Of a DNA stretch of 64,000 nt, positions 1 through 60,693 are shown in pieces. The translations under genes were made by a program, and so were the position numbers. How positions within the stretch are numbered: the stretch's first letter is position 1; every line of letters begins with the position of its first letter. Source of the DNA: Macrostomum lignano (lineage: Eukaryota); NCBI GenBank assembly GCA_002269645.1, contig NIVC01003318.1, forward strand, positions 40,233-104,232, read 5' to 3'. The notes beneath the pieces are model-generated. The model ran no database searches. It worked only from the letters and a program-made list of their open reading frames with translations, and was not told where the DNA came from.

Positions 1-732
1 TGAACTTATTCCAAAGTAATGTACATTTGCTATGTACATTGAGCCCTATCGCCTGACCCTTAGTCTGGGGGGAATGAGTTTGGTGAGCCGCACGAACAAC
101 AGAAAAAGCAAACTTCACATGCTTACAGTTTCTGTTCTGATTGAGTTACAGAGTTGACACTTTTAACAGACAGTATTTAGACAGAGATCGAGTAAGTCAA
201 TGAAATATTGTCAAGTTTGAAGTCAACCGCATCAAAGTTAGTCATTTTTTAAACTCATTTAAACTCATTTTTTCTTACTTTAAACTCATTTTAAACTCAT
301 ACCCCCTCTGGGCCAGATCAGGAGAGGCAGGCGGAGGCTGGGTGGCTGTTTCGCTGACAAAAACAGCCTTAATTTAAAAGTGCACAGCGCATGTTGAAAC
401 TCGAAATCTTACACGATCACGATTGTGTCAAAATAGTTGAAGATTGTATGTGTTGAATTTGAAGAGGATTGGTGAAACTAGAGCGGCGGGCGCTATCGTC
501 GTGTATCATTAGTGAAAAAATCGCGCGTTTTGAGCAGTTTTTTGCACTTTTAGGTAGGAGGAAGACTTGGATTTAGAAAATTTTAAGGGAGCCTGATGAC
601 ACTTTCCGTAGTAAGTCTAGGGCGGATGCAAAATTTGGTGTACATGTAGTTTGGTTGAGCGGTTTGGGAATCCATAGCGAAGTAATTTGTACAGACACAC
701 AGATACACAGTTTTGATTTTTATCGTTTAAGA
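1..732 (-). mobile_element. Probable non-autonomous Helitron-like element (5' end at 732; the other end is not defined)
   Basis: The minus strand reads A|TCTTAAACGATAAAAATCAAAACTGTGTATCTGTGTGTCTGT..., the TC start + AT-rich + (TGTC)-type microsatellite layout also seen in the Helitrons at 19138 and 41503. No 3' end identified. Confidence 0.4.
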
Positions 733-1183
733 TCGAGTTTTTGATTTACAGTATAGTAGAAAGCATTATGAACAAAAACTTGAGCAACTTGACCTGAAAA
801 TTTTGTTCGTTCGGTTATAAAGAATTCAGACTATATAGCAGCTGACAGTGAATGGAGAGCTAAAAAACTGACAATTACTGACTTGTCCAACCGGAATCCA
901 TTAATGAACCGAAAAATCACTGATTGTTGCTGCAAGCTACATTATAAATTGCTGCATCTCTATCGATTACCGTTGGGATTATAGCTCGGGAAACCATTCC
1001 GCTCCCATTTTTACAAAGACTAGCCAAGAGCTAGAATCGGTCCTGTGGACAAAAAATCGTTTCTATTTCTACATCTAAAACGATGTAGTAAAATGGGATA
1101 GGTAAAATTCAATGCAAGTTCTAGTTAATTGTAAGACTTTTGACGCTTTGTGAATCAGATTTGAGCAACAAATCGTTTACCCA

Positions 1184-1239
1184 GTGTTCCCCACAGATAC
1201 TAAATACCCTAAATAGTATTTAGTATCTGTGGTGTTCCC
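1184..1239. repeat. 40-bp hairpin (16-bp stem, 8-nt loop) flanked by an 8-bp direct repeat; miniature TIR element or footprint
   Basis: CACAGATACTAAATAC (1192-1207) is the exact reverse complement of GTATTTAGTATCTGTG (1216-1231). GTGTTCCC occurs at 1184-1191 and 1232-1239. Confidence 0.7.
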
Positions 1240-1464
1240 GTAAAATAATTCTGAGAACGTCGCTGCAGAAAAACGAATGAATATCCGCTACTACAAACTG
1301 CAGTCAATAAAATAGTTCGTATGTGGAGAGTGCATTTCCATTTAGCATTTGGCTGTCTAGTCTATAAAAGCCTCATCTGCTTAATTGACTGAAGGCCTAC
1401 GCATCAATAAAGTACTTTCTGTAGACTGCGAGCAAAGCAAATAGATAAGCTCGTATTTTAGTTC

Positions 1465-1490
1465 TTTTTATTTTCTACTATGGCTTTATT
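1465..1490 (-). promoter_or_regulatory. Candidate polyadenylation signals (AATAAA) for the minus-strand GIY-YIG/hairpin transcript
   Basis: TTTATT at 1485-1490 and within ~1465-1471 on the plus strand, about 160-180 nt downstream of the paralog stop at 1646. The region is AT-rich, so chance matches are possible. Confidence 0.35.
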
Positions 1491-1645
1491 GGTGACAAAA
1501 GACTTTAATAGAATTTCTTGAAGTAGACAGAACCCTGCAACTAAACTAATAAATTAGTTACAATTATAATTACTAGTAGAAAGTTCCCATGCAAACATAT
1601 GATAAGTTTTATAGTAGGAGAATAATCTAACTTAGCATAGCAGTC

Positions 1646-2158
1646 TCAATCGCAGGTGACATTGGCGTTACGCGCCTGAGGCTGTGACTGCGGACGCTGA
1701 GCCATCGCCTCATGCAGCGCTGGCAGCGTCTGCCAGTCAATGAGCAGAGACAGATTGGCACCACCTGGCCACAGAGCGTCGAGCTGCAGCACCAACCTAT
1801 TGTACAGCTCGGCCGCGAGCAGCTGGTCAGGCTCGGGATGCAATTCAAACAGCCATTCGTCTGCTGTGCTTAGCAAAAGCATTGCGGCAGTAGCGCAGTC
1901 CAGGCACCCTGAACTAGCATTGTCACAATTCTCGTCAGATGGAAATCCGTCCAGCGATCGGTGAAGAAGGCAGCGAAATTCTGCGAGTACATCGTCGCAC
2001 GGACGACTGACGCAGCGCCAACAACGTCTGGACCTGTCGTGACGAGTTGGTAGTACAATCGATAAACTATTTATAAGCCAGGGACCACTCAACACTCGGG
2101 ACGGGAAACGACAATATTTGGAGGCCGATCTATCAATAACTTAGTCCTCGAAAAGCAT
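1646..2158 (-). pseudogene. Paralog fragment of the GIY-YIG-like domain of the 432-aa ORF; no in-frame ATG
   Basis: FRCLLHRSLDGF...ATAAMLLLSTADEWLFEL...LYNRLVLQLDALWPGGANLSL aligns with LRRLLWLAFDGL...VSAAILLTRQTDWQLTL...LQNELTLRLGCLWPRGLNSSL. The only in-frame ATG (2158) is followed by TAA after 5 codons; the ORF-track start is GTG. Confidence 0.6.
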
Positions 2159-2406
2159 CGCTTGGATTAGGTTTTTACCACAGCCACTAACCCGCTGACT
2201 ACAAGGTAGAACATATCGAAGTAATGCTTTTCGAGGACTAAGTTATTAATAGATCGGCCTCCAAATACTGTCGCTTCCCGTCCCGAGCATTGAGTAGTCC
2301 CTGGCTTATAAATAGTTTATCGATTGTACTACCAACTCGTCACGACAGGTCCAGACGCTGCCGGCGCCACGCCAGTCGTCCGTGCGACGATGTACTCGCA
2401 GAATTT
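1976..2406 (-). ncRNA. Long inverted repeat / candidate hairpin RNA (183-bp arms, 65-nt loop)
   Basis: Arms 1976-2158 and 2224-2406 aligned by hand: 171/183 identical, no indels. All 12 mismatches form G:U pairs in the minus-strand RNA. Confidence 0.72.
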
Positions 2407-3638
2407 GTACTCGCGGCAGTCTGCAGCTGGGAATAGTTGCTCATGTCATTACAACCGCTTTCCGGCTTGCTCATTTCCGACTGTAGAATTCTCGCCAGGG
2501 TATTGGCCAGGCAATCCAAGTTTGCTACAGAGTCGTCAAAAAATTCCAGCCCACCGGTCTCCGAGCGCCACCAGCCACTATGTTGTCGCACGTCTCGTCG
2601 GTACTTCAGTCTTTCTTTGGTTTGCGGCTTTGCGGCCAACTCAGCGGCCATGGCATGGAGGCGATGGCAAGCGTCGTAGTCAGCCTGATGTAACTCGCTG
2701 CTACGCTGTCGCAGCTGCTGGCAAAGCCGGCTAAACTCGCGAACAGCCTCATCGCACCGGTACAGGCCTGACTCGTCCGCCTCAAAGGCAATCCGACGCA
2801 CGTCGTCAAACTGCAGATCGGCAAGACCCAATCGTCTAGCTTCCATCGCCGTTGCAGCCTCCTCGACAACAGCTAAGTGACTTCGACTCGCGCCGTTCTC
2901 TGTGGATCGGCACCAGTCAAGCTCCCGTAGCTCCTTCAAACAGACAAGGCTCTGATTCAGACTCGAGTTCAGACCACGAGGCCATAGGCAACCTAGACGA
3001 AGCGTCAGTTCATTCTGCAAAGTCTGTCGCTCCGCCTCAGAGTCGTCAGCTGCCACGAGAGTCAGCTGCCAGTCGGTCTGACGAGTCAACAGAATCGCTG
3101 CACTGACCACTGCATCAGATTCGTCAAGTCGTCTTTGATCGCTACTCGGGCTCTCAAGTCCGTCGAAAGCCAGCCAGAGGAGACGCCGCAGCGCCTCAAT
3201 AAGTTGGTTCGCGTCGCGACCGACGTAGGCAAATGCCGGCAGCCGAGCATGACGCAAAGCGAAAACACCCGGTCCGTGAAGGCGTCGCTTTGCCTCCGTA
3301 GCCGCTTCCGATAGTCCGGCCGAATCAAGAGCCGATCGAATCAACGTGCGCTCCAGATTGGCATCGGCTATCTTGGCCTCGGACGGACGGCCCCACCAGC
3401 CCGAGCGCTGGCGAATCGCCTTGGCGAACGCACGCCTTTCGTCAGTCGGCGTCTGATTTAGCGCTGACGTATGTAGCTGCGCCACCCGGACGAGATTGCG
3501 CCAATCGTCCTGCTGGAATTGCTGCAAAGGTTTGCCACTTTGGATTCGCTTCTCCAGCTGGTTGTAGACCTCCTGAATGCCCGGTTCCAGGGCTGCCGTG
3601 CCTGGAACCAATAGGGCCTTGTTCGTTGATTCGTTCAT
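2340..3638 (-). CDS. 432-aa orphan protein with a degenerate Penelope-like GIY-YIG endonuclease domain between two repeated helical RQxSGWW domains
   Basis: Long ATG-initiated GC-rich ORF. GVF(124-126)...YVG(138-140)...R204xxxQ208...LxxLWPRGLN(215-224) matches the GIY...YIG...RxxxE..WI..L.T..P.GLN pattern of Penelope-element endonucleases. Internal repeat AIRQRSGWW / DVRQHSGWW. Confidence 0.78.
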   Translation of the reverse strand: MNESTNKALLVPGTAALEPGIQEVYNQLEKRIQSGKPLQQFQQDDWRNLVRVAQLHTSALNQTPTDERRAFAKAIRQRSGWWGRPSEAKIADANLERTLIRSALDSAGLSEAATEAKRRLHGPGVFALRHARLPAFAYVGRDANQLIEALRRLLWLAFDGLESPSSDQRRLDESDAVVSAAILLTRQTDWQLTLVAADDSEAERQTLQNELTLRLGCLWPRGLNSSLNQSLVCLKELRELDWCRSTENGASRSHLAVVEEAATAMEARRLGLADLQFDDVRRIAFEADESGLYRCDEAVREFSRLCQQLRQRSSELHQADYDACHRLHAMAAELAAKPQTKERLKYRRDVRQHSGWWRSETGGLEFFDDSVANLDCLANTLARILQSEMSKPESGCNDMSNYSQLQTAASTNSASTSSHGRLAWRRQRLDLS

Positions 3639-5409
3639 AGTCTCCGTAGCTATAAGTAAGTAACGAGTAAAATTGAAGCTCTAGAGCAAGGCTAAGTGAA
3701 ATGGAACAGGTCTGAGAAATCTTAATTAATAAACTCTGTGAGTTTGGGCTTTAAAGCCAATTCTCTCTTTTCATTTAGCGAACCTAATGCTCCTCTTATG
3801 CTGGTCTATTGTGCCTTGCTTACTAAAGACTTTTCTCTCCTTCCTTTGCCTCCACTCCTCATCTCTCTCTCCGACAGCTTTCTCTCCATTATAGTGTCTG
3901 CTTTCATCGATTTGCTCTGACGCACAGACGGTTTCTGTCAGCAGCAAGATGTGCGGAATAATATAGTACCTGTCTTTCCTATACCAGTCTCCGGCCCAGG
4001 TTCTTATAATAGCCGACTGGAAAAACAAGTTAAAGTTAGCATAGAGTATAACAGACTAGTTGGAACACTATTATGCACTGGCATGAAAACATTCTTTACT
4101 CGGAAGCGCAACGTCGCCCAGTCGCCGTTACTTTAAATATAGCAGAACGAAAACAAAAACTCCAAATAAAAGTACTCTAAAGACTCAATTTCAACTGTAA
4201 TGCAAAGTTTTTCCTAAAACTATAATTTATAAATATGCGAATAGATGTATACATAACTGACGGGTCGGCTCACAAATACGGTTTCATCATTTCATTATGA
4301 AGGGTCAACATTTTTATTGCATCAGAGATGCATCGGAGTCAGTTGTTTGTCGATTAGTTGTCAGTAAATTTTGTGGTCGATTTGCAGTTTGAGCTAATCT
4401 GATTGTGCTTGTCGAGCGCCGTTCGTCACCATTGCCTTTTATTTGTGGAATTATTAGTTATAGTTTAGTAATTATTATTACTGTGCCTCTGCCAAATTAT
4501 TGTTTGGCTTTTATTGTAACTAGTGGTAGTCGTTGTTAGTTGTGGTTAGTCGGTCTCGAAAGAGGCCGTTCGGGTTACAAATTATACTTACCATTGCAAC
4601 CTAATTTAACCGAATTTAATTTAACCTAATTTAACCTAATATGCTGCTAGATACTGACAAGCAAGTATATTCAAAGCAAAATTTAAACAGCGCTTTCTAT
4701 TTGAACTTCAGCGTATTTTGGAAGCGACAAGTCAAAGAACAGAACCATCGCAAAAAGATGCTGTGAAAATTTAAAAAGGAAAAGAAAAGACTTTATTTGA
4801 GGGAATAACCTGGGAAATGACGATTTCATAACTCGTACAAACTTAATGCTCTCATATGGAAGCGCGGTAGCCGATTAAACGATTTGAAGACACGTTATTG
4901 AAAACATACAGTCAAGTTATTATGCCCTGTTGCTGGTCTTTCAATGTTCAAGCGATTAGCACGTAGTGGCTCTTTTTAGTACTAATAGTAATCTTTCAAG
5001 AGTAATCGCTTGGCCACTGTTGGGTCAGGCAATCATGGAATTTTTTTTTAGTTCGGCAGCTCTTTTTGCTTCAAAGTCGGCGCCCTCTGCTGCAGAAACT
5101 GCTTCTGTCAATATTGGCAATTGCCTATCAGCTGTTGAATCATTAATGCACAGATTTCTTTATAAGCTGTTGGCTGCCTACTGAAAGCTGCAATCTTGAG
5201 GCTGCATGCAGAATACCGGAGCAAACTGTTGTTGCGTTTCTCTATTAATAGGAGTTATAAGTAGATGCACTTTGATCCAACGCGGCGCAGGGAGGTGCGA
5301 TAAAAGTCAGCCCTGATAGTCGATATGGTTAGTCGAACGGCCCAGTATTTGAGTTGGGGTTTTACTGTTTCCTAATGCTCAAAACTTTTTGGTCTATTCA
5401 GTAGGTTTA

Positions 5410-5600
5410 ATCAATCAATTTTCGCAGGAGGGCTGTTCAGTCCAAGGACTGGGGGGAGGGGGAGTCGCCACACGCACCCTCAATTACACCAGCTAATGCT
5501 GGCACCCATTTTACAATGCTGACACCAGTGGAATCAGGAATCGAACCCTCAACCTTCAAGTCATGAATCCGATGCTCTAACCACTAGGTTACAACACTAG
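5410..5600 (-). mobile_element. tRNA-derived SINE family A, internally deleted copy
   Basis: The minus strand has a tRNA-like head with B box GGTTCGATTCC. Shares GGCTGTTCAGTCCAAGGACTGGG...CAGCTAATGCTGGCACCCATTTTACA with the copies at 27690 and 56402. Confidence 0.75.
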
Positions 5601-6474
5601 GAAAAATGCGAAAAGGTGTTAAAAAGCTTTCCAGAGCATTTACCCTGCCCACTGTAAATCATCTTGATAGCACTTTCTACGCTGATACCGGGGTAAATGT
5701 CATTAATGAAAATAATTAAGTCACCTACGCTTTGGAGCTCTTAGAGCGTTTTTACACGTTCAGGCAGAAAATACGGCTCGTAGTATTGCGCAGATTGAGC
5801 AACCGTTTATCGGAGCTTTCTGCATTCACTGTAGGTTAATACGCAAAGCTCATAAATTCACCTGATTATTTGAGGCATAGAAAAGTGTAGTAACTTATAT
5901 TAAGAAATGACAGAATTTGGTTAAAATTGTCAATAGTTATTATCGAAACATGCGCCGCTCCGATCAACATTTTAAGAACAAATTTAGCTATGGAAAATCA
6001 GTATACAGGCATCCGTGCAGCATGGTACACAGAGTCTCCATTGGTTTGTGCTGACTAACGCAGCTCCTGTCGTCCCATTTAACGGACAGATGCTTCAATT
6101 TACGGGGCGAATGGTTGGGATTGCAGGGCTTTCCGAGAAGCTCGATAGCCCAAATAAGTTTGGCCGTCTCCGCTGAAATTTGATCCTGACAGAAAGAAAA
6201 TTTATGGCGAAACCAACACGGCGCACTGGAGAAGCTCAGAAGCAGCCATTTGCACTAAAAATACTGAAACCTTTGAGTAGAAATCGAGCAGGCTGGAATC
6301 AGCACCAACTTGGTAAATTATTTATTTGAATTTCGGCTACTGGCTGCAAGACTTTCAGAAAATTCCGCGACCATAAATTCATAGTTTAAAAAGCACTCAC
6401 TTCTATTTCAAGCTTTTTTTGTCAAAAATTTATTGCACTTTGATAATTCTATTCTGACTTAAGACAGGGTCCTT

Positions 6475-6695
<221 letters not shown>

Positions 6696-7403
6696 AACTT
6701 TAAAGTTCAGTATGTGACACTGTTTATTTATCTTTAAGTACAGAAAAATCGAGCAACGTTGTTCTTCTAGTAGAGCCATTGGTCACTGAACAAGAACTAA
6801 CCATTAGCAAGCAGCTCAATGCCTATTTGACTGCTTACTGTCCTTAATCCCTTTGCTGAAGCAGTATTTTAAATTGTACTTTTTTATATTGGTTTAATAA
6901 ATTCTGTTAGAATAAAAAATTAGGCAATTCTTCCCTCACATTTTGTTCTAAAAGTATAAATTTGCTTCCATATTTTACAGATAACTTACGGGCACTTTCC
7001 AAAAACTAAAAAATGACATTACCTTCTTTAAAAAAATCGTAACCTATTTTTTAACCCGTAAAAATCGTTGTGCCTATCCATGAAATAGTTGATTTTGCAT
7101 CGATTTAAAACCTACATCTATTATCGATTTTATTCAACCTACGACGCAATTTCCTATTCAGTTTAATGCCATTCCTTTAAATAAAACAATTCGAGGGTCG
7201 AATATTTTGGCAAAAATAGTTTTACAGTGAGTTCAAACGCTTTAATTTCCAACGTCCAATCAAAAGCGACGAGACAGACATGGCGCAATAGGCTTCGTAC
7301 CGAGGCTATTATGTGGGTATCTGTATTTATAAGAGTTGCCAGCAGCATCTCAAGAGCGCACTCCAAGTTAGGCGGAAAATTGAAGGAAAGGAATTTCTTA
7401 GAA

Positions 7404-8615
7404 ATGTCACTGAAAGTCGCGAACGACTCTGAGTCGGAATCGTCCGTTTGCGAGGCCTATTGTCAGGCGAATACAATTTTGTGGAGCGTTCTGCTTCCGC
7501 CACTCTTAGCCGTTGGCCTGATAGGCAACTTGCTCATTGTGCTTGTGTTCAGTACTAGTACCAAACGACGGCGAAGGAAGCCGGTCCTCTGCATCACCAT
7601 GGTGACGCTGGCCTGCGCCGATCTGCTCGTGTTCCTGTTCCCCATCACGCGGCACTGGCTGAGACACGCCAAGCTCTACATCAGCTTTGACGTGCAAACT
7701 TTGGGCACAGGTGTCTGCAAGACGCACGAGTTTCTCGTCTACTTCTCGTTGATGTTCAGCATCTGGATGGTGGTGCTGGTGTCCGGAGAGAGATTCACCA
7801 TCATCTGTTTCCCCTTGCGTCGATCGCGACTCCTGACGCCGCGTCGAATCGTCGCTGTGATTGTTGCTATCATAACTGTCTCTGCACTGCTCAATGTGCA
7901 TTTCTTTTGGACTCGCGAATTCGTCTGGAACCACCAACTGAACCGAATGAGCTGTCAGAATGCGCGTTCGGGTCTGGACGCGTTCATTTCTAAATCGGTT
8001 CACCCCTTCGTAGACATGACCTTCACCGCTGGGCTGCCCCTCCTGCTATTGGTCATCTTCACTGGGGCGATCGCGCACAGACTTTACCAAAGAAGTCGCC
8101 AGCTTAAAACTCTGACAGCCGGGCTCAGCAACTGCTCGCCAGCTGGACGGCAGCATCGCCTGCTCACGCCAACCACGCGAATGGTGCTGCCTGTGCCGCT
8201 GTTGTTCATCCCGCTGGCGATGCCCGTGAAGTTCTGGCTAGTTGTGCACCACGGCAAGGGCATTCCGGGCTCCGTCCAGCCGGGCACGCCCGAGTACCAC
8301 AGTGTCCGGCTGGGCTGGTCCGGCCTTCTGTTCCTGCAGTTCTGCAACTTCGCCTGCAACTTCTTTATTTACAGTCTGATGTCCGCCGACTTTCGCGCCG
8401 ACTTGGCCAGACTTTTGTGCGGCCGGTGCCGTCGCCGGGTCTGGTGTCGCCGGGGTGAGCAGTCGGCCTCGACCAGATCGGCGCCGCCAACCGCAGCCGC
8501 AGCAGTAGACGCCGCCGATGTCGTTGTGAACGACAGGAAGATGGTGCTAGCAAGCAACTTTGATGACGCGAGCTCGGTCTACCAGATGCAGCTCCGGTCT
8601 TGCAGACGATGTTAA
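7404..8615 (+). CDS. Intronless rhodopsin-class (class A) GPCR, peptide/orphan receptor-like, ~403 aa
   Basis: Seven hydrophobic segments: TM1 GLIGN, TM2 LACADL, Cys at the top of TM3, ERF at the DRY position followed by ICFPL, Cys in ECL2, TM7 NFFIY, helix 8 FRADL. Likely start is ATG 7404, in frame with the ORF opened at 7227. Confidence 0.9.
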   Translation: MSLKVANDSESESSVCEAYCQANTILWSVLLPPLLAVGLIGNLLIVLVFSTSTKRRRRKPVLCITMVTLACADLLVFLFPITRHWLRHAKLYISFDVQTLGTGVCKTHEFLVYFSLMFSIWMVVLVSGERFTIICFPLRRSRLLTPRRIVAVIVAIITVSALLNVHFFWTREFVWNHQLNRMSCQNARSGLDAFISKSVHPFVDMTFTAGLPLLLLVIFTGAIAHRLYQRSRQLKTLTAGLSNCSPAGRQHRLLTPTTRMVLPVPLLFIPLAMPVKFWLVVHHGKGIPGSVQPGTPEYHSVRLGWSGLLFLQFCNFACNFFIYSLMSADFRADLARLLCGRCRRRVWCRRGEQSASTRSAPPTAAAAVDAADVVVNDRKMVLASNFDDASSVYQMQLRSCRRC

Positions 8616-9679
8616 ACTTCAGTAAAAAGAATTGAGAGACATTACGAAAGTCAAATATTTTTTATAAATAATATTTACCTGTACAATAAGATTTGTTTTC
8701 GTCTAGTCGGATTATGAACTCAAGTATGATTGGATCTTATTTACTGTTACATGTAATGTCTTATACATTTGTTGAATTATATTATCCGGAGTTAATCTAA
8801 ACACCATCAGATCCACAAGCTAATTTTAACATAAATTTTGCCCCATCCTGCACACCTTTCTACGCAGTAGAGATTAATTACCAGAAAATTCACTAGATAT
8901 TTGTGTTGCCATATACCAGTGCAAATACGAGCAGCAAATAAATTACAAAAAAAAAATTAATTCCATTCTGAGTGTGATATTAAAATTTCGTTCCGTAGAC
9001 ACACAAAATTGTTAAAGCATGCAGTTTGGGTGCATGCAGTTCACTGTACTGACTGAATTTATATGCGTTTCCATGTGCACAACACTGTCGCATGTTTGAA
9101 TATTAAAGCTCTCCCTCTGATTCATAGAACTCACTCCGTTGTCTTGTTCAGGTGGAAATGTCCCTGCCGGAGTCTCACGGAGAGCTGCTAAGCTCAACAA
9201 TTATACAATTATTAATGCTGAATTAGCGTACTTTGTGTTGTCTAATTCACTAATAAAGTGGTATTTCTCCCGCTATCTAACCTATGCCCCGTTTAACTGA
9301 GTCCGGTGAGATGAAGAGAAACTGCTGGATGCCAGTTTTATTCACACTGAATTTGTCTATGGCAAAACCAAGGTGTACTCAAGTAGAAGGACGGAAAAGT
9401 ACGGTTCTTGGAAAATTTTAAAAGGCAGGTTTTACCAAAGAAATACATTACGGAGATTGGACTTGGAGCTGGTTTTCATTTTTCCAGCAAAAAAATGTTA
9501 TTGCTTTTGATAGAAGGGAGGCACAATTTTCATCTTTTGATATGCCTTGCCTTTCTTATAGACTTATTGATATTCATAAAGTTTTTCGTTACGTTTTTTT
9601 AAATTTTTCAAGAATTCAGTTTCTCCTTCTACTCGAGTAGCCCTTGAGTGAAACTCCATCCAGCGCCAGGTATCAAAGG

Positions 9680-9940
9680 ATCGAGATTAGGAGTTAGGGT
9701 TAAGTCGTGGCTTAAAGAGAGGATTTAATACCAAAGCTCCAAGCTGGAATACTGATATCCTAGGCTAGATAGCTGGCTTTCGAGGTGAATGCTTTTTGCT
9801 TTAAACACATCAGGTTCTTTCAGAAACTAACAATATCTAACAATATTCAGTGATTGTACAAGGTCAAAATATGGATTTAGTTTATTCTAGCAAGTTGCTT
9901 CTCTCTTTGTTGCCTCCCATCGGGGGGCGCAGATCGCTAG
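9680..9940 (+). mobile_element. 3' part of a Helitron related to the 41503-43821 element
   Basis: GCCTCCCATCGGGGGGC hairpin followed by CTAG|T (9937-9941), nearly the same as the terminus at 43790-43822. Degenerate TTAGGG at ~9686-9700. 5' end not found. Confidence 0.55.
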
Positions 9941-10559
9941 TTCAATGACAACAAACTGAAAACTTTCTAGCTCGCCAAGAACAGTCTCAAGCAAATATTT
10001 TAGCACGGATTGCACGCCTAGCGTACTTCTACTTTAGTTGACCACGAAAACAGAAATGTTGTGAGGTTTACTAAAACTACAACTGCACTCAGGGGTATTG
10101 TGAACTTATTCGCATTGAGCTCTCCAACTAATAGTAATCGTAGGTTACGCAATCGGCAGCTTGAGTGTGGAGCAAAATGCCAGTTGCGAGCGTGCAAACT
10201 GATACAAACAATTTTGGCGTCAGTGGTATACTATTTGTTCGATAAAACTTCTGCAAAAGTAATAAAAAAAGTGTTGCAACCGTACACTATCTATAATCGC
10301 TATTATCAGTAGTCATGTTTTGCTGACCAGATATTTCTGTAAAGTTTGATGGCGGTGTATAGAGGCTTGTTCCCGAGAAATGCTGCGACTGTACGAAAAA
10401 GAATATGTACAATGATGGCAGTGTGAAGGAGTGCAAAAGTTGTGCCGCGCGAAAGGGAATGGTTAATCAGTAATTTCTAAAAGCACTACTTACAGTAATG
10501 TTCAGAATGCGTCGTCGTACGCAAATGAAAAATTTGTATAAGCAGTAGCTTTTTATTAT

Positions 10560-10906
10560 TACTCGTAGAATCAGGGGTTTGTGTGCACTCTGGTACACTT
10601 TAAACGACATTGTTATTACCAATTCCGCCGACTCCCCTGAGCAGGCGCACAAGCGCGCGGATACGTACGCAGTCATACGCACAGGCACACACTCACACAG
10701 GAGTGTACAGCGGCCCTAACTTTATTTATCGTTAGGCATGTACACTTCACTGTGCCTTGGGGCTCGGCCCTCAATCGCATTAATCCCACGAGCAGAGCCA
10801 AGCCGAGATTCCAATTCAGCCCCAAATTAATGTGGACTGCACTTGGAATCGAGCCTGGGCCGCTGGTACATCAGAGCGTCGCGCCAGACCACTGAGTCCC
10901 TGCCCC
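10560..10906 (-). mobile_element. tRNA-derived SINE family B copy
   Basis: A/B-box head (CAGTGGTCTGG...GGCTCGATTCC). The body aligns with the copies at 17223, 28843 and 60330. Confidence 0.85.
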
Positions 10907-11733
10907 TGATAAACATTAGTTTTATCAGTCTAAGAAATATTCAACAACAACTCTTCTTTCATTTACAAGAGTTCTGCAGAGTATTTAGATTAGCTGAGCT
11001 ACCTGTAGTCCTCTAGAGCCTATTATTAGCTGCAAAACGGGTGGAGCCAAGAGTGTATGCATTTTCCACCTTGCCTCTCTGCCTTCCAGGTCGCTCCTCC
11101 TTTCTAACGCTTACCTCTGATCCTCCCAATACACTCCCTAAGCTCAGCGTTTCTCTCTCCCCTCTGTCCGTTGTTGCCATGACAACAAAACTGTACCACA
11201 AACCCCGCCCTGTGAGCCAGGCAGGATGCTTGACAAGCGCGGATGGGTACTTTTTCCTTTCTATCTTTGCCCGGCAGTTCAGCTCTTCCCGATCCAGAGA
11301 GTGCTTATAGGTCGCAGTTTCACTCTCTCCCCCTCTCTCACCCTCTCCGTCTCTCCGTCTCCCAAATTCTCGTCCCGCTCATTCCTATTTTTTTCATTCT
11401 TTAAGGCTGAGCAAACGCTGATCCGCACAGATACGGGAAAGGTGTGTACACTGTAGTTGGGGCCTCACAGTGCCTCTACCCTAGCCCATTGTCACCGCAC
11501 TTTGAATTCAAAATCCAATATTAAAAAGATAGAAATTAAGGCTCTGAGCGGCATCATCAGCTTAAGTACAGGAGAAGCACAGACAGTGGCTAGCTAAAGG
11601 TACAGCCACAGTTGGACATTGCTAGGGAGCAGGAATCAAATTACTTAATACGGCCCCGGTCCCGCCCAGTTTTATTGCTAAGGGGAAGATAATAAAAACA
11701 GAGTGAGCACAGCGGAGCATCTGCACAGCGTGC

Positions 11734-14700
11734 ATGAGCTCTGGTAACAACAGGGTGTCACCGGCGATGGCAGCTGTGAACCAGGCGTTGGTGCCAGACA
11801 ATGACAACGAGCTGGTGGCGTCGGCGCGGCCCCAGCCGGGACGTGCGATACCCAACGCGCCGGAGTACGGATCGCCCGAGCACTTGAGACGTGTCCCCGA
11901 GCCGTTGAAACAGCAGCAGCAGCAGCAGCAGGTCACCCTGTCGGAGAACCTGCCAGTTCAGATGGTGCGATTCCTGCGCTCAACCGAAGACGGCGGCGCG
12001 GACGATCAAGGCGTCGGCGTCAACATTGGGAAGTCGCGAGTTAACCAGGTGGTCACCTTCCAGGAGATGATTGAGGTAAAAACACTTTTTTCAAATTAAT
12101 GTCTTCATGCACAGACAGTTTAATTTTGACGAACGAAAACTATAAAAAGTTGCAATAAAGGCACAATCCCGCGAACTTTCTGTTAGAGAGCGTCAAAGAT
12201 GACCGAGTTAAAAGCATAGGTAAAAAATTAAACTCCTCTAAAAACTAAATGAAGAGGCAACCAAACTCGATGAATGAGAACAGAGGTCAAATTCTGCTAC
12301 GTCTTGGACGTCACATCGATCGGCCTAGAAGATGATTTGGGGAATCCACCAAAACGCATCTTGCCCTCCAAGTTGTTTTATATCTGAGGGTCCTGACGTT
12401 TTCTTCTGATACAAAACTCTTGTCTTTATTAGAGAAAAAAGATGTGACAGCTGCCTTTATTAAGCTACGTTTACATCCATATATTCTCATGGGTCGGTGT
12501 TCTGGCTTAGAATGTTTGCTAAGTAAGGCGCAGCAAAACAATACCAGCTCATGACGAACCACACAGGCAGCGAAAGAAGGCCGAACCAAAGACCTGGACG
12601 AACTGATGGGTCCGTCAGTTCCAACGGGCCCAACCGGCGTGATCAAGGTGCGCAAGAACATCCCAATCGACAAGCGCGACTCCGAAGGCTACAGCATGCT
12701 GCACTATGCGGCCAGGAACAACCACAGCGATGTTTGCGAGCTTCTTATCAAACGAGGCGCTGACGTGAACGTAGAAGGGCCGGATCAGATGACGCCGCTG
12801 CACCTGGCTGCCAAATATCGAAGGTCGCGGTCCAAAGCGGCGATTACTGTGAGTTTGGTGAAGGCCAACTGATAAATAGACCATTCTGGATCTTTGCTCT
12901 TGTTTTTTATTCATTTTAGAGGTCTATGAATTGCATTGACGCTTTTATCTACCAGGCGATTAAAACAATCTACCCAGGAGCTACCACTATCGACCCTCAT
13001 ATATTTATCAACGTTTACTCTCATGTAATTACCAATTTCCTACCCTAGAGTTAACACTGTCTACCCTAGAGTTAACACTGTCTACCCTAGAGTTACCACT
13101 GCACTGTCTACCCTAGAGTTACCACTGCACTGTCTACCCTAGAGTTACCACTGTCTACCCTAGAGTTACCACTGCACTGTCTACCCCAGAGTTACCACTG
13201 TCTACCCCAGAGTTACCACTGCACTGTCTACCCTAGAGTTACCACTGCACTGTCTACCCTAGAGTTACCACTGCACTGTCTACCCTAGAGTTACCACTGC
13301 ACTGTCTACCCTAGAGTTACCACTGCACTGTCTACCCTAGAGTTACCACTGCACTGTCTACCCTAGAGTTACCACTGTCTACCCTAGAGTTACCACTGCA
13401 CTGTCTACCCCAGAGTTACCACTGTCTACCCCAGAGTTACCACTGTCTACCCTAGAGTTACGACTGTCTATCCTAGAGTTATCACTGACTGTCCACAATA
13501 GAGTTACGTTCACCACTGTCTACTCAAGGTTGCTACTTTCCTTGAGTCTCGCCTGCTCCCTGGAACTTTTATTGACTTCGCAGACTACTTCTGGTGACCT
13601 GCTGGTTTTATATAGCTGTCATTGTTATTGTAAATGGTGATTTACAACTACAAGTACAACAAGGACCCGCCAAAAGCATTAAAGTTTGCAAGATTTGAGC
13701 AGCATTTAGATGCACACTAAAGCACTGGCTGTCTAAACAATGAAATGCCAAACCTCCGGAAACCTGGCCCCAGCAGCAAGCATGTCCACCGTTTGGCATT
13801 TTCTATTCCCAATTCCAGCTGTGTGTACCTTGCTGTTTCCATAGCAACCCTCGTGAGGTTTTAGAGCCTGCAGCAGCAGAAGCTTAATAATATTGCAAAC
13901 TGTCTCCCCCCTCTCGCTCTCGCTCTCGCCCTCACCCTCGCTCAACTGCCCCTGTCTCTTCTCCATTTGCTTACTGAGAAAACATTGACATTAGCAGAGA
14001 ATATTGGCAATAAAAAAATCAGTCTGTTCACGCTAGGAGCGCTGCTACTGAGTAGGACTAGCTATGCCAACCAGTAGTGAACTTTTTGACAGTAAAGAAT
14101 ATGCACTAATAGGCGCATAAGTGTCTCGTTGAATCCAAACGCAATCGGCCTTTCATTCACCTAGAAACTAACAAAGAAGGCGCGGTGTATTTTGTTGCCT
14201 TTGATGTCAACTAACTAGCTTGGGATGCTGACTGTGTGGGTAGGGCGTATGATGGAGAGTTAGAGCGAACAGATATCTCAAGTCCCAGCCAATCACTACA
14301 CGGCACACTTGACAAGGTGGAGGGTACAGTGGACATGTGTCAGCCAATCAGCGGTCACTTCAATATTGTACTACAGAATTGTACGTTCTGTAGGTGGGTG
14401 GGTGTCCGAAGTGGAACTTTCTCATTGGCTGGCAGATCTCACTACTTCTCAGTCTCTCCATGGATGCCCGACAGATCTTGTGTCACTTTTCTCGATTCTA
14501 GCTATAACGCGTCACGGGAGATCAATATAACTAGGGAAAGACTACCAAATGACATTAAATTTACTTAAATTATTTCGCCTAATAAAATAAATAGAAACTG
14601 AAGCAATCTGGAAGTGCAGACGCTGTGACAGCCGCCGCTGACATTGGCACCGCCGGCAAAGGCGGAGCTTTTACAAATTTGCCGCCCATTCATAACGTGT

Positions 14701-17700
14701 CACTGCGAGGCAGAGCTCGCACAGCTGTGAGAAATGCTTGGATGAAATTGAAGCTTTTTTCCTCTCCTACTGACCTGTTTTTGAGTCGGATTTCATCTTG
14801 GATTTCTTTTCTCTATCTAGATTTGAATTTTCAACAATTAAAAAATGATATCGAGAATTTCAACTAGAGGCCTTGATATTCGTTGAAAGACCCGATGAGA
14901 GACCCGATGATGGATCCCATGATGGACCCGATGATGGAACCAATGAGAGACCCGATGAGAGATCCCATGATGGACCCGATGATGGAACCAATGAGAGACC
15001 CGATGAGAGATCCCATGATGGACCCGATGATAGAACCAATGAGAGACCCGATGAGAGATCCCATGATGGACCCGATGATGGAACCAATGAGAGACCCGAT
15101 GAGAGATCCCATGATGGACCCGATGATGGAACCAATGAGAGACCCGATGAGAGACCCGATGATGGATCCCATGATGGACCCGATGATGGAACCAATGAGA
15201 GACCCGATGAGAGATCCCATGATGGACCCGATGATGGAACCAATGAGAGACCCGATGAGAGATCCCATGATGGACCCGATGATGGAACCAATGAGAGACC
15301 CGATGAGAGACCGATGAGAGACCCGATGAGAGACCGATGAGAGACCCGATGAGAGACCCGGTGAGAGACCCGATGAGAGACCCGATGAGAGACCGATGAG
15401 AGACCGATGAGAGAACCGATGAGAGACCGATGAGAGACCCGATGAGAGACCCGATGAGAGACCGATGAGAGACCGATGAGAGAACCGATGAGAGACCCGA
15501 TGAGAGACCGATGAGAGACCCGATGAGGGACCCGATGAGAGAACCGATGAGAGACCCGATGAGAGACCCGATGAGAGACCCGATGAGAGACCGATGAGAG
15601 ACCCGATGAGAGACCCGATGAGAGACCCGATGAGAGAACCGATGATGCACCCGATGATGGACCCTTGGGAAATGGACCCGATTACGAGTATGGACCCGAT
15701 GAGAGACCCGATGACAGACCCGATGAGGGAAATGATGACAGACCCCAGAAAAATACTAAAAGCCAGCAATTGGCCTATATACATGAATGGGTTTGGGTCA
15801 TCGTTATATAAAATTTGTCGGATAAATTTCCACAGTCAATAGAAGGATATTTAGCTCGTAATAAATTTGTTGCCTTTTCTTGGGTGCTTTTCACTATCTA
15901 TTCATTCATTCTTCGACTTTTTTACGTATCTATAACAATTTGAAAGTTTTTTTGGACACGAGAAAACTGTACAAAACTTTAACAGACGTCAATTGACAGG
16001 GATGATGAGGTATCTGAATCAAATTTGAATTATCTTGCAGTATAAAAATTAATAACTCTGTTAACTCTACATACTAAGGTGTAACTATATTCGATGTGCT
16101 TCTCTTAATGTACTGTTGTGAAAACTGTCAATCAACCTTCAAATTTTAATTACTGTGCTTCAACTCTAAGAAAACGTACAACCTACAGGCAAATGCACAG
16201 AAAGAACTTTACTTTAACTATTTTACTTGTTAATTGAAGGTTAAATATTTGGTTCATCATTAAAACAAAAACTTCACACTCAACAGCGTACGAGACAGGC
16301 TGAGGCATCGACCAATGCAAAACTGGTATAAAGTCAATTTACAATTTTATGCTATGTCTACCTGTAAGCTTTTGTTGTAGTTGTTTGGACGTTTTTTGTT
16401 ATACCGCGATGACCTTTTGTGACGATCAACTAAAATGTAACCGGCTTTTGACTGGCTCTGCTGCAATGTATTGATACTAAAATAACTAAATTGATTCTTT
16501 ATTTAGCCCATCCTAACTATTTGAATCCGTGAGCAGAACAAGGTCCAATGTTCAGCAGTTGAAAAAAATACAAGCAATACAAAATACAGTCCAGTTTAGA
16601 CCTAAAATACCGTTTTATAAAGTTTTTGTTGTTGTTTGTATGATTAACAATTATTGTTGCTTACGAATCCCTTGAGTTGTAAACTTTAATGCGTTCGACT
16701 TGTGCCCCCGCTTTGCTGATAGGCAAAGTACTTGCAGTTTATCACATATTTTTAATTCTATAGTTTTTTGTTCACGCAGTCGCTTTGTACAATGTTGAAC
16801 TGCTGCTTTTTAAAGCTTACAAAGCCTACTCTCCTTACCTTGTCGTTTTAGAAGAATGAAGACGAGTCGGAGAGTCTTGCGTTGAAGCCGCAGGTAAGCT
16901 GAGTCGATGTCTTCTGTTTTGGTTGAACCCGATTTCACTGCTTGATGTCTTTTGTTTCCTCAAAAGTCGATACGATGCACTTATAATCCATCGTTAATTG
17001 ACTTGATCTGAACGTGAATTATATTCTTTACCGATTTTCCTTTAAAGTTTTTCCTAGATGTTACTTTATGTAATAGCTGTCGTTAATTTACTGATATACA
17101 GGCATATGGCAGAGAGACACTAAGATAATAAAGCAGAGCGACCGACAGACTTAAAGACACACAGACAGACAGACACTTTAAGATAATAAGACAGAGAGAC
17201 CGACAGATCCAAACCTAAGACGAGGGCCGTAGTACAGTGGTCCAGCGCGGCGCTCTGGTGTGCCAGCAGCCCAGGTTCGATTCCAAGTGCAGTCACATTA
17301 ATTTGAGGCTAAATTGGAATCTTGGCTTGGCTCTTCTCGTGCAATTAACAGCCTTGAGAGCCAACCCCCCAAGGCACAGTGAGGTGTACATGCCTAACGA
17401 TTAATCAAGTTAGGGCCGCTGTACACTCCTGTGTGAGTGTGTGCCTGTGCGTATGACTGCGTACGTATCCGCGCGCTTGTGTGCCTGCTCAGGGGAGTCG
17501 GCAGAATGGGCAGCAATGCCTCTCGCCGGTTATGTGACAATGTCGCTTAAAGTGCACCTGAGTGCACACAGCCCCTGTCTCTAATCGAAAAGATTCAAAG
17601 ACAGACAGACAGACATAAGACACGTAGACAGAAAGACAAGACCGATAGATACAATATATGTGAATGGATGTATAACGCATAACGCATAACGCATATATAC

Positions 17701-31649: not shown

Positions 31650-31990
31650 AATTTCCCCCCGGAGAGCCACAAATCTGTGCCCCAGAGAGCCACAATTTCC
31701 CCCGGAGAGCCACAAATCAGTGCACCAGAGAGCCACAAATCAGTGCCCCAGAGAGCCACAAATCAGTGCCCCAGAGAGCCAACAAAACAGTGCCCCAGAG
31801 AGCCAACAAAACAGTGCCCCAGAGAACCATAAAACAGTGCCCCAGAGAGCTATAAAACAGTGCCCCAGAGAGCCACAAAACAGTGCATCACCCTAGAGAG
31901 CCACAAAACAGTGCCCCAGAGAGCCACAAAACAGTGCCCCAGAGAGCCACAAAACAGTGCCCCAGAGAGCCACACAACAGTGCCCTAGAA
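31650..31990. repeat. Minisatellite, ~23-bp units (AGTGCCCCAGAGAGCCACAAAAC)
   Basis: Direct tandem repeats. Confidence 0.92.
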
Positions 31991-60329: not shown

Positions 60330-60693
60330 TTTTTTAGAGACAGGGGCCGCGAGCACCCTGGCGCACTTTAAGCGAACTTGTCACACAACTGGTGAGAGGC
60401 ATAAAACTGCCCATTCCTCCGAATCCCCTGAGCCGACACACAAGCGCGCGGATACGTACATGTACGCAGTCATACACACAGGCACACACTCACACAGAAT
60501 ATACACACTTTATTTTTATCGTTAGGCATGTACACTTCACAGCGCCTTGGGGGTTGGCCCTCAAGCCCGTAAATTGCACGAGCAGAGCCAAGCCTTGATT
60601 CCAATTTAGCCGAAAATAATGCGACTGCACTTGGAATCGAGCCTGGGCCGCTGGCACATCAGATCGCCGCGCCAGACCACTGGACTACGGCCG
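60330..60693 (-). mobile_element. tRNA-derived SINE family B copy
   Basis: Reverse complement of the copies at 17223 and 28843. Confidence 0.85.

What the first reader, a model, noticed from the sequence alone, without database searches (positions are those of the whole stretch)
1646..3638. Possible self-silencing gene cassette: GIY-YIG-like gene, hairpin and paralog on one strand
The minus strand reads: 432-aa CDS, whose last ~22 codons and stop (2340) lie inside the right hairpin arm; 65-nt loop; left arm, which is the 5' half of a diverged paralog of the same domain; the rest of the paralog; AATAAA signals at ~1490/1470. The hairpin is therefore an inverted duplicate of a family member, and siRNAs from it would target that sub-family. 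This is how known hpRNAs relate to their progenitor targets (e.g. Drosophila Nmy/Tmy versus Dox). Inverted partial duplications are also typical of Penelope-like element ends. Inference: a domesticated or selfish gene family coupled to its own RNAi suppressor or an mRNA 3'-UTR dsRNA control element.
Basis: inference. Interest (0 to 1): 0.74.

Follow-up and report, generated by a model that had tools for sequence, protein, structure and literature searches.

The report
Intron hairpin expanded into its gene
In one copy of a flatworm (Macrostomum lignano) gene, an old inverted repeat in an intron was re-copied and lengthened, which removed a splice site and made a 192-bp hairpin whose only mismatches look like RNA editing; this is a recent mutation, not an evolved self-silencing device.

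Summary
The hairpin is real: arms 1976-2167 and 2215-2406, 192 nt, 47-nt spacer. The last 22 codons and stop of the 432-aa ORF lie in the right arm.

The window is Macrostomum lignano assembly Mlig_3_7. The downstream "paralog" is exon 2, the second module of the same gene. This two-module, weakly GIY-YIG-like protein also occurs in annelids and a nemertean.

A ~97% identical second locus (L002) joins the exons through a canonical GT-AG intron of 563 nt. That intron already holds a shorter, imperfect inverted repeat. In the window copy, 307 nt (the last 23 nt of exon 1, the 5' splice site and the 5' intron) are replaced by 102 nt. These are the reverse complement of the intron end plus the first 58 nt of exon 2. 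This is what template switching at an inverted repeat produces.

All 12 mismatches between the new arms are A-to-G on the sense strand, specific to this copy, and all form G:U pairs. That is an ADAR-type pattern. Mlig_3_7 was polished with RNA-seq reads, so these are probably RNA edits written into the assembly.

An evolved hpRNA cassette and a Penelope-like element are not supported. An accidental, newborn hpRNA is not excluded.

The parts
2414..3638 (-). Exon 1 as retained in this copy. It encodes module 1 plus the linker and SGWW motif of module 2, and ends ...NYSQLQTA. Homology to the sister locus L002 stops at 2414.
2340..3638 (-). 432-aa ORF. It is exon 1 read through into the antisense copy of exon 2 and intron, giving a novel 24-residue tail ASTNSASTSSHGRLAWRRQRLDLS and a stop at 2342-2340.
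2312..2413 (-). 102-nt segment that replaces 307 nt of L002 (10596-10902). The lost L002 sequence holds the codons for GVFVLRH, the GT donor and the 5' part of the intron. The new segment is the reverse complement of the intron end plus the start of exon 2. The junction carries an 8-nt direct repeat, GCGAGTAC, at 2414-2407 and 2399-2392.
2215..2406 (-). Right arm. 2406-2349 is antisense to the first 58 nt of exon 2; 2348-2215 is antisense to the 3' end of the intron. It looks overwritten as a whole: at 5 substitutions and 2 indels it matches the left arms rather than the right arm of L002.
2168..2214 (-). 47-nt spacer (loop), also present in L002.
2034..2167 (-). Inner part of the left arm: the 3' end of the ancestral intron, with the 3' splice-site AG at 2035-2034 now buried in the stem.
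1646..2033 (-). Exon 2, the second GIY-YIG-like module (RSRRCWRCVSRP...NANVTCD, stop 1648-1646). Its first 58 nt (2033-1976) form the outer part of the left arm. It differs from L002 at only 2 of 388 nt.
2013..2372 (-). Twelve copy-specific A-to-G changes on the sense strand, which are the only mismatches of the new duplex: 2372, 2368, 2362, 2361, 2358, 2288, 2274, 2268 in the right arm and 2134, 2093, 2086, 2013 in the left arm. A thirteenth lies at 2161 next to the loop. Site 2013 turns the Tyr of the YVG motif into Cys.
1467..1509 (-). First poly(A) signals downstream of the gene: ATTAAA 1509-1504, AATAAA 1490-1485 and 1472-1467.

Best explanation
The window is Macrostomum lignano assembly Mlig_3_7, contig NIVC01003318.1.

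Region 1646-3638(-) is one copy of a two-exon gene. It encodes a protein with two tandem, weakly GIY-YIG-like modules. The family also occurs in annelids and a nemertean.

The ancestral intron splits the GIY...YIG-like motif of module 2. It already held an imperfect inverted repeat of about 97 nt, possibly a small foldback element.

In this copy a template-switch (fold-back copying) event at that repeat re-synthesised the upstream arm from the downstream arm and ran on past it. The arms became identical and grew to 192 nt. 307 nt were replaced: the last 23 nt of exon 1, the 5' splice site and the 5' part of the intron.

Shown consequences:
- The canonical donor is lost.
- The 3' splice site is buried in the stem.
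- Exon 1 reads into antisense sequence and stops, giving the 432-aa ORF.
- Any transcript that reaches the first poly(A) signals must carry a 192-bp duplex.

Inferred: the locus is transcribed and the duplex is hyper-edited by an ADAR. The 12 A-to-G differences in the reference are those RNA edits, written into the assembly when it was polished with RNA-seq reads. The true genomic arms would then be nearly identical and the event very recent.

The hairpin is therefore a by-product of a mutation in a redundant gene copy, not an evolved silencing device.
For: Origin and annotation:
- Window 1-13638 is 100% identical to the contig that carries the NCBI model BOX15_Mlig022171g1.
- The sister locus L002 (96.8-98.5% identity across the aligned blocks) joins ...QTAGVFVLRH|RSRRCWRYV... 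Its exon 1 ends at 10617, the donor is GTAGAA, the acceptor is CGACAG, and the intron is 563 nt. This is the only GT-AG placement that reproduces P0002.
- The window's annotated 538-aa model needs an 'intron' that is not GT-AG in any of its three equivalent placements. Its ends are what mapping an L002-type spliced transcript onto this locus would give. The published pipeline used BLAT mapping of de novo transcripts at 80% minimum identity.

Two-module architecture:
- It is shared with proteins of Tubulanus and Owenia and with a JGI metagenome protein; Lamellibrachia has a one-module member. GVFVLRH.RSRRCWRYV aligns with GVYVFQHKKYPHFRYVG.

Template switch:
- L002 has a shorter inverted repeat that lies wholly in the intron: 72 nt at 89% by the repeat finder, about 97 nt by BLAST.
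- The four-way alignment shows the window's right arm agreeing with both left arms where the right arm of L002 differs. It also carries the window-specific base at 2061, so it was copied from the window's own left arm after the two loci diverged.
- Template switching that homogenises and expands inverted-repeat arms is described in PMC8794818, PMC8604942 and PMC13100816.

Editing signature:
- Of 192 pairs, 177 are Watson-Crick and 13 are G:U. The 12 in the new duplex are all A-to-G on the sense strand, derived in this copy.
- Outside the hairpin the differences from L002 are balanced: A>G 24, G>A 20, T>C 25, C>T 14, and 60 transversions out of 143.
- P(12 of 12) is about 2e-10 under that spectrum. 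It is about 5e-4 even if only wobble-preserving changes were allowed, because no C-to-T occurs.
- The 5' neighbours of the edited A are U6, A4, C1, G1.
- The sense RNA folds 40 kcal/mol better than the antisense RNA.
- The paper's Methods state that the assembly was polished with Pilon using Illumina DNA reads and RNA-seq reads (PMC5730564).
- ADAR2-dependent A-to-I editing of mRNA is shown in a planarian (PMC8797187).
Against: - No reads were available, so a DNA-versus-RNA difference at the 12 sites is not shown. The changes could be real genomic substitutions.
- The depletion of G as 5' neighbour is not significant (p = 0.17).
- Presence of an ADAR in M. lignano was not checked. No paper linking Macrostomum with RNA editing or ADAR was found.
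- Transcription of this particular copy is inferred, not shown.
- Only two loci of the family could be examined, so the direction of change rests on one sister locus plus the distant homologues.
- L002 itself carries a 19-nt frameshifting deletion in exon 1. Whether any intact copy exists in the genome is unknown.
Confidence: 0.7

Rival explanations
1. This is an evolved or newborn hairpin-RNA (hpRNA) locus. The transcript's 192-bp stem is diced into endo-siRNAs. These silence mRNAs of the same family through the 58 nt of exon-2 sequence in the stem.
For: - The anatomy matches how Drosophila hpRNAs arise, by inverted partial duplication of their targets (own knowledge: Okamura 2008, Czech 2008, Wen 2015, Lin 2018).
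- The stem is long and perfect apart from G:U pairs on the sense strand.
- Exon 2 of the paralog L002 matches the arm except at site 2013.
- M. lignano has Dicers, Argonautes and RNAi amplification genes (PMC5594548).
- The sense-strand-specific A-to-G pattern suggests that dsRNA forms in vivo.
Against: - The long stem is absent from the sister locus, so it is not conserved.
- Making it destroyed the gene's own exon end and splice donor.
- Two thirds of the stem is intron sequence with no mature-mRNA target.
- No small-RNA data are available.
- If ADAR hyper-edits the stem, that would work against dicing (own knowledge).
Confidence: 0.12
2. The structural account is the same, but the 12 A-to-G differences are real genomic substitutions. 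They would be kept because G:U pairs preserve an RNA stem while making the DNA palindrome less perfect, or they would come from a strand-specific mutational process.
For: - All mismatches are wobble-compatible on the sense strand only.
- Perfect DNA palindromes are unstable, so weakening one could be favoured (own knowledge).
Against: - A filter for wobble compatibility would also pass C-to-T, yet there are 0 C-to-T against 12 A-to-G (P about 5e-4).
- No other substitution has accumulated between the arms, so there was little time for 12 fixations.
- A documented route for RNA edits to enter this assembly exists.
Confidence: 0.2
3. The extension of the inverted repeat is an assembly or polishing artefact, for example from chimeric fold-back reads. 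The real locus would then look like L002.
For: - The genome is highly repetitive and partly duplicated, and it was assembled from early PacBio data and polished with mixed data.
- The annotated model had to bridge this locus with a non-canonical gap.
Against: - The breakpoint sits exactly at a pre-existing inverted repeat with its spacer preserved, and shows an 8-nt direct repeat at the junction (GCGAGTAC, twice). That fits a biological template switch.
- The newly made outer part of the right arm carries five of the A-to-G changes. So either reads or evolution have 'seen' this sequence.
Confidence: 0.07
4. The whole hairpin is a foldback transposon or MITE, or the end of a Penelope-like element, inserted next to the gene.
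For: - The ancestral inner repeat is bounded by TTATAA on both sides and lies in an intron, as MITEs often do. This is inference.
- Penelope-like elements carry GIY-YIG endonucleases (own knowledge).
Against: - The outer 58 nt of the arms are exon 2 of the host gene, not element sequence.
- There is no second copy of the arm in the window or in L002 outside the orthologous site.
- There is no reverse-transcriptase or other transposon domain.
- Homologues are annotated as ordinary proteins in annelid and nemertean genomes.
Confidence: 0.04

Closest known systems
Template-switch (quasipalindrome) mutations that homogenise and expand inverted-repeat arms (PMC8794818, PMC8604942, PMC13100816)
   Same: A pre-existing imperfect inverted repeat is present. 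One arm is rewritten as the exact complement of the other. The arm then extends into flanking sequence and replaces what was there. The junction shows a short direct repeat.
   Different: The scale is large for this class: about 190 nt copied and 307 nt lost. The event also hits an exon-intron junction, so it truncates a gene.
Drosophila hpRNA loci (hp-CG4068, hpRNA1; Nmy and Tmy against Dox)
   Same: There is an inverted partial duplicate of a protein-coding relative on one transcript, with a long near-perfect stem that could in principle feed the siRNA pathway.
   Different: Here the hairpin sits inside the parent gene itself and breaks it. Only 58 of 192 stem positions match a mature mRNA. 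It is not shared with the sister copy. No small RNAs or target effects are known.
ADAR hyper-edited dsRNA clusters (inverted Alu pairs in human 3' UTRs; ADAR2-dependent sites in planarians, PMC8797187)
   Same: The changes are only A-to-G, on one strand, clustered inside a long intramolecular duplex, with a U/A-rich 5' neighbour.
   Different: They are seen in a genome assembly, not as an RNA-DNA difference. This needs the extra step that RNA-seq polishing wrote them into the reference (PMC5730564).
GIY-YIG nuclease superfamily (UvrC N-terminal domain, Slx1, T4 EndoII, I-TevI)
   Same: The predicted beta-beta-alpha-alpha-beta-alpha core, a GVF...(F/Y)VG motif pair and an invariant C-terminal Asn. 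UvrC, Slx1 and EndoII are among the top seven Foldseek hits.
   Different: There is no sequence-profile match (Pfam, PDB). The Foldseek E-value is only 0.085. The catalytic Glu position is not clearly conserved. Two modules occur in tandem, each preceded by a helical SGWWG region not known from GIY-YIG nucleases.

Membership tests
Template-switch / quasipalindrome mutation | The new sequence is the reverse complement of nearby sequence on the same molecule | tested here: met
   Window 2406-2225 is the reverse complement of 1976-2157. The only exceptions are 12 A-to-G sites.
Template-switch / quasipalindrome mutation | A pre-existing imperfect inverted repeat lies at the site in the unmutated state | tested here: met
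   L002 has arms of 72-97 nt at 80-89% identity, with the same 47-nt spacer.
Template-switch / quasipalindrome mutation | The arms are homogenised towards one template arm, and flanking sequence is replaced rather than only added | tested here: met
   The window's right arm matches the left arms at 5 substitutions and 2 indels where the right arm of L002 differs. 307 nt are replaced by 102 nt.
hpRNA (endo-siRNA hairpin) locus | A long intramolecular dsRNA lies on one transcript | tested here: inconclusive
   The predicted stem is 192 bp at -382.8 kcal/mol, and there is no poly(A) signal between the arms. Transcription of this copy was not observed.
hpRNA (endo-siRNA hairpin) locus | Dicer-dependent small RNAs of about 21 nt come from both arms | not testable with these tools
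   No small-RNA reads are available.
hpRNA (endo-siRNA hairpin) locus | The arms are complementary to a target mRNA encoded elsewhere | tested here: met
   58 nt of the arm are the start of exon 2. The paralog L002 differs there only at site 2013. The remaining 134 nt are intronic.
hpRNA (endo-siRNA hairpin) locus | The hairpin is retained among gene copies or species | tested here: not met
   The long stem is absent from L002. Other species were not available.
ADAR hyper-editing cluster | Only A-to-G mismatches, on one strand, inside a long duplex | tested here: met
   12 of 12 mismatches qualify. The background spectrum is balanced. P is about 2e-10.
ADAR hyper-editing cluster | G is depleted as the 5' neighbour of edited A | tested here: inconclusive
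   1 of 12 edited A have a 5' G, against 26 of 98 for all A in the duplex. Fisher p = 0.17.
ADAR hyper-editing cluster | G in RNA but A in genomic DNA of the same animals | not testable with these tools
   This needs DNA and RNA reads. Only the polishing method is documented.
GIY-YIG nuclease superfamily | A sequence-profile match (Pfam GIY-YIG families) | tested here: not met
   No GIY-YIG hit at E up to 1 for the window protein, or at E up to 0.1 for seven homologues. PDB profile searches found nothing.
GIY-YIG nuclease superfamily | The GIY-YIG alpha/beta fold | tested here: inconclusive
   The model of module 1 has pLDDT 73.8 and order beta-beta-alpha-alpha-beta-alpha. Best PDB matches are UvrC GIY-YIG 1ycz (E 0.085, probability 0.87, target-normalised TM-score 0.54), then Slx1 and T4 EndoII at E 1.5-2.1.
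GIY-YIG nuclease superfamily | The conserved Tyr/Tyr, Arg, Glu and Asn catalytic set | tested here: inconclusive
   G of GVF, H, W, N and WPxGxN are invariant. The first Tyr is mostly Phe. The YVG Tyr is only partly conserved. No invariant Glu is seen.
Penelope-like retroelement | A reverse-transcriptase domain linked to the GIY-YIG endonuclease, in many copies | tested here: not met
   No reverse-transcriptase domain. There is no other copy in the 64 kb. Only two M. lignano proteins turned up in the protein searches.
MIR408 microRNA precursor (Rfam RF00690) | A score at or above the family's gathering threshold | tested here: not met
   28.3 and 23.1 bits on the two strands, against a threshold of 64 bits. 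This is a generic hairpin match to a plant family.

The most novel reading that the evidence does not exclude
The template switch has just created a functional hpRNA in a flatworm. The broken gene copy is still transcribed. Its 192-bp stem is both ADAR-edited and diced, and the resulting siRNAs dampen the remaining copies of this spiralian two-module GIY-YIG-like gene through the 58-nt exon-2 segment. This would be a caught-in-the-act birth of an hpRNA outside arthropods. It would also show the replication mechanism (inverted-repeat expansion by template switching) that makes such loci.
Probability: 0.1. Interest if true: 0.65.

Novelty: new member of a known kind. Interest (0 to 1): 0.36.

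Why it matters
1. It is a clear, large example of inverted-repeat expansion by template switching that truncates a gene. Because the before state (L002) and the after state (window) both sit in one genome, the mechanism can be read base by base.

2. If the A-to-G sites are RNA edits written into Mlig_3_7 by RNA-seq polishing, the reference of a model flatworm carries RNA-level changes in transcribed dsRNA regions. One here is an apparent Tyr-to-Cys change. Users of the assembly should know this. The same imprint could be searched genome-wide as a free map of ADAR substrates.

3. The annotated 538-aa protein BOX15_Mlig022171g1 rests on a non-canonical intron and probably does not exist as drawn.

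4. The gene belongs to an uncharacterised spiralian family with two GIY-YIG-like modules, which may deserve study of its own.

Tried and rejected
- Pfam scans of the 432-aa and 149-aa ORFs and of seven homologues gave no meaningful family.
- PDB sequence-profile searches with the whole-protein and the module alignments found nothing.
- Foldseek with the whole-protein model gave only noise. Only the single-module model pointed to GIY-YIG.
- A word-indexed protein search with the module alignment returned nothing.
- An exact look-up of the 432-aa ORF in public assemblies found no gene call, so no transcript contig could be obtained.
- BLAST of the hairpin, the L002 intron and the protein against the 64-kb window found no further copy. 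The MITE idea for the ancestral repeat could therefore not be tested.
- The bacterial promoter and terminator scan is irrelevant for this eukaryote.
- Rfam gave only sub-threshold MIR408 matches on both strands.
- Literature searches for ADAR or RNA editing in Macrostomum found nothing specific.
- Reverse transcriptase skipping the stem was considered as the source of the annotated non-canonical intron and rejected. The gap runs from 7 nt outside the 5' base of the stem to 62 nt inside the 3' arm. It is therefore not symmetric about the stem, but it coincides with the exon-2 boundary.
- L002 as the derived state was rejected, because only L002 encodes the conserved GVFxxxH strand and a GT donor.
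Full report
**1. Origin of the window**

The 432-aa ORF matches two Macrostomum lignano proteins and nothing else at close range. P0001 (BOX15_Mlig022171g1, 538 aa) is 100% identical. P0002 (BOX15_Mlig028671g1, 334 aa) is 98% identical. Window 1-13638 is 100% identical to contig NIVC01003318.1 of assembly GCA_002269645.1, Mlig_3_7. A second contig, NIVC01003802.1 (locus L002), carries a sister copy. It is 96.8-98.5% identical over about 13 kb and has the same neighbours.

**2. The observation**

The hairpin is real and far beyond chance.
- Arms are 1976-2167 and 2215-2406: 192 nt, 92% Watson-Crick, 47 nt apart.
- It is the only long inverted repeat in the 64 kb.
- The sense (window minus-strand) RNA folds into one unbroken stem of -382.8 kcal/mol, z = -37.
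- The 432-aa ORF (2340..3638, minus strand) ends inside the right arm.
- Poly(A) signals lie at 1509-1504, 1490-1485 and 1472-1467, and there is none between the arms.

**3. What the downstream "paralog" is**

In L002 the sequence after ...NYSQLQTA continues GVFVLRH and then meets a GT donor (GTAGAA). An intron of 563 nt ends in CGACAG, and exon 2 begins ...RSRRCWRYVSRPCDD. This is the only GT-AG placement that reproduces P0002. So the domain downstream of the hairpin is exon 2 of the same gene.

An exhaustive HMMER search found seven more distant relatives. Those with a named source come from the nemertean Tubulanus and the annelids Owenia and Lamellibrachia. Three of them (Tubulanus, Owenia and a JGI metagenome protein) have two complete tandem modules. 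Each module reads SGWWG ... PGVFxFQHKxxPxFRYVG ... DW ... ND.IL.HDSLWPxGLN ... WPP. The intron of M. lignano splits the GVF...YVG motif pair of module 2.

No Pfam family matches. A model of module 1 (pLDDT 73.8) has the order beta-beta-alpha-alpha-beta-alpha. Its best PDB match is the GIY-YIG domain of UvrC (E 0.085, probability 0.87), and Slx1 and T4 EndoII are also in the top seven. "GIY-YIG-like" is therefore a reasonable but weakly supported label.

**4. How the hairpin arose**

L002 already has an inverted repeat with the same 47-nt spacer. It is shorter (72 nt by the repeat finder, about 97 nt by BLAST), imperfect (80-89%) and wholly inside the intron.

Homology between the window and L002 stops at window 2414 and resumes at 2311. 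The 307 nt of L002 in between are replaced in the window by 102 nt. The lost L002 sequence holds 23 nt of exon 1, the donor and the 5' part of the intron. The 102 nt are the reverse complement of the last 36 nt or so of the intron plus the first 58 nt of exon 2.

A four-way alignment of the arms adds two points.
- The inner part of the window's right arm agrees with the two left arms at 5 substitutions and 2 indels where the right arm of L002 differs.
- It carries the window-specific base at 2061.

The whole right arm was therefore re-synthesised from the window's own left arm after the two loci diverged, and synthesis ran on into exon 2. The junction shows an 8-nt direct repeat, GCGAGTAC, at 2414-2407 and 2399-2392.

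This is the pattern described for template switching at imperfect inverted repeats, which homogenises and expands the arms (PMC8794818, PMC8604942, PMC13100816).

The direction of change is fixed by two facts. Only L002 encodes the conserved GVFxxxH strand, and only L002 has a canonical donor.

**5. Consequences for the gene**

This copy has lost the donor and seven conserved codons. Its acceptor AG (2035-2034) is buried in the stem. Exon 1 reads into antisense sequence and stops after a 24-residue novel tail.

The NCBI model P0001 bridges the gap with an "intron" that is not GT-AG in any of its three equivalent placements. Its ends are what one expects if a correctly spliced L002-type transcript was mapped onto this locus. 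Block 1 would end at ...actgccg and block 2 would start at acaggtcc. The annotation pipeline did map de novo transcripts with BLAT at 80% minimum identity. The 538-aa protein is probably an annotation artefact.

L002 is not intact either. It has a 19-nt deletion, corresponding to window 3343-3325, that shifts the frame in exon 1. Of 23 exon-1 substitutions between the copies, 15 fall on third codon positions. Exon 2 differs at 2 of 388 nt. The gene was therefore under constraint until recently.

**6. The unexpected feature: the arm mismatches**

Of the 192 pairs, 177 are Watson-Crick and 13 are G:U. The other two, together with one of the G:U pairs, are old loop-proximal differences.

Polarised with L002 and with the partner arm, all 12 mismatches of the new duplex are A-to-G on the sense strand and derived in this copy. 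Eight are in the right arm and four in the left. A thirteenth lies at 2161 beside the loop.

There are no transversions, no C-to-T and no G-to-A. Outside the hairpin the differences between the two loci are balanced: A>G 24, G>A 20, T>C 25, C>T 14, and 60 transversions out of 143.
- The chance of 12 of 12 under that spectrum is about 2e-10.
- Even a filter that passes only wobble-preserving changes gives about 5e-4, because it would also pass C-to-T.
- The 5' neighbours are U6, A4, C1, G1, which fits ADAR preferences but is not significant (p = 0.17).
- The antisense RNA would carry 12 A:C mismatches and folds 40 kcal/mol worse.

An A-specific, strand-specific change confined to a duplex is the signature of A-to-I hyper-editing.

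[quoted passage not shown] The most economical reading is that the true genomic arms are nearly identical, the locus is transcribed on the sense strand, an ADAR edits the stem, and the polishing step wrote the edits into the reference. ADAR2-dependent mRNA editing is documented in a planarian (PMC8797187). It was not checked for M. lignano. One of the sites (2013) changes the Tyr of the YVG motif to Cys in the reference.

The alternative is 12 real substitutions. It is less likely for two reasons: no other substitution separates the arms, and C-to-T is absent. It cannot be excluded without reads.

**7.

The anatomy was read correctly. The inference of an evolved self-silencing cassette is not supported.
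- The long stem is private to one of two copies.
- It was made by an event that broke the gene.
- Two thirds of it is intron.

The Penelope-like idea fails as well. There is no reverse transcriptase, no repeated copies, and the homologues are ordinary host proteins.

What remains open is the accidental version: a newborn hpRNA. M. lignano has Dicers, Argonautes and RNAi amplification genes (PMC5594548). The stem holds 58 bp that match exon 2 of the sister copy except at site 2013. I put this at about 0.1.

**8. Confidence**

| Claim | Confidence |
|---|---|
| Structural account: exon 2 of the same gene, and inverted-repeat expansion replacing the exon end and donor | about 0.9 |
| ADAR-type origin of the A-to-G pattern | about 0.75 |
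| Entry of the edits into the assembly through RNA-seq polishing, rather than real substitution | about 0.55-0.6 |
| Overall | 0.7 |

Noticed in passing
L002:9681 (corresponds to window 3343-3325): The sister copy of the gene has a 19-nt deletion in exon 1 that shifts the reading frame. This is why its NCBI model (P0002) starts at an internal Met. Both annotated copies of this gene therefore look damaged, each in a different way.
   Followed up: partly
window 2038-2414: The NCBI gene model BOX15_Mlig022171g1 (538 aa) uses a non-GT-AG 'intron' that cuts out most of the hairpin. It is best explained by mapping a paralog's spliced transcript onto this locus.
   Followed up: yes
window 2013: One of the A-to-G sites lies in exon 2. 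It turns the conserved Tyr of the YVG (YIG-like) motif into Cys in the reference. The sister copy has Tyr.
   Followed up: partly
window 2343-2388: Several GT dinucleotides inside the right arm (2343, 2346, 2370, 2388) are in the right phase to splice in frame to the retained exon-2 acceptor at 2034. The one at 2343 (GTGACG) overlaps the stop codon. Whether any of them is used is unknown.
   Followed up: no
window 7227-8615 (+): A rhodopsin-family GPCR gene (Pfam 7tm_1, E 3e-20). It is the upstream neighbour in both paralogous loci.
   Followed up: partly
window 24043-28644 (+): A run of ORFs with ankyrin repeats followed by an ion-transport domain. This is probably the exons of a TRP-type channel gene. 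An ankyrin-rich gene also lies at the end of L002.
   Followed up: partly
window 6476-6694, 13055-13507, 14884-15745, 29829-30690, 31657-32005, 42115-42674, 49304-50678, 51027-52322: There are many micro- and minisatellite arrays with units of 4, 26, 12, 34, 23, 23, 20 and 34 nt. They explain the extreme GC-skew blocks, and several long 'ORFs' (for example 14838-15784 and 50089-50764) are just translated repeats.
   Followed up: partly
window 10622-10894, 17235-17507, 28856-29128, 60413-60682: A dispersed repeat of about 273 bp occurs four times in the window in both orientations at 84-90% identity. It is also present in L002. It is probably a short interspersed element.
   Followed up: no
window 2058-2324, both strands: Sub-threshold Rfam matches to the plant MIR408 precursor (28 and 23 bits against a gathering score of 64). 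This is a generic long-hairpin match, not a microRNA call.
   Followed up: yes
L002:10903-11143: The ancestral intronic inverted repeat is bounded on both sides by TTATAA. It could be a small foldback element or MITE. No other copy was available to test this.
   Followed up: no
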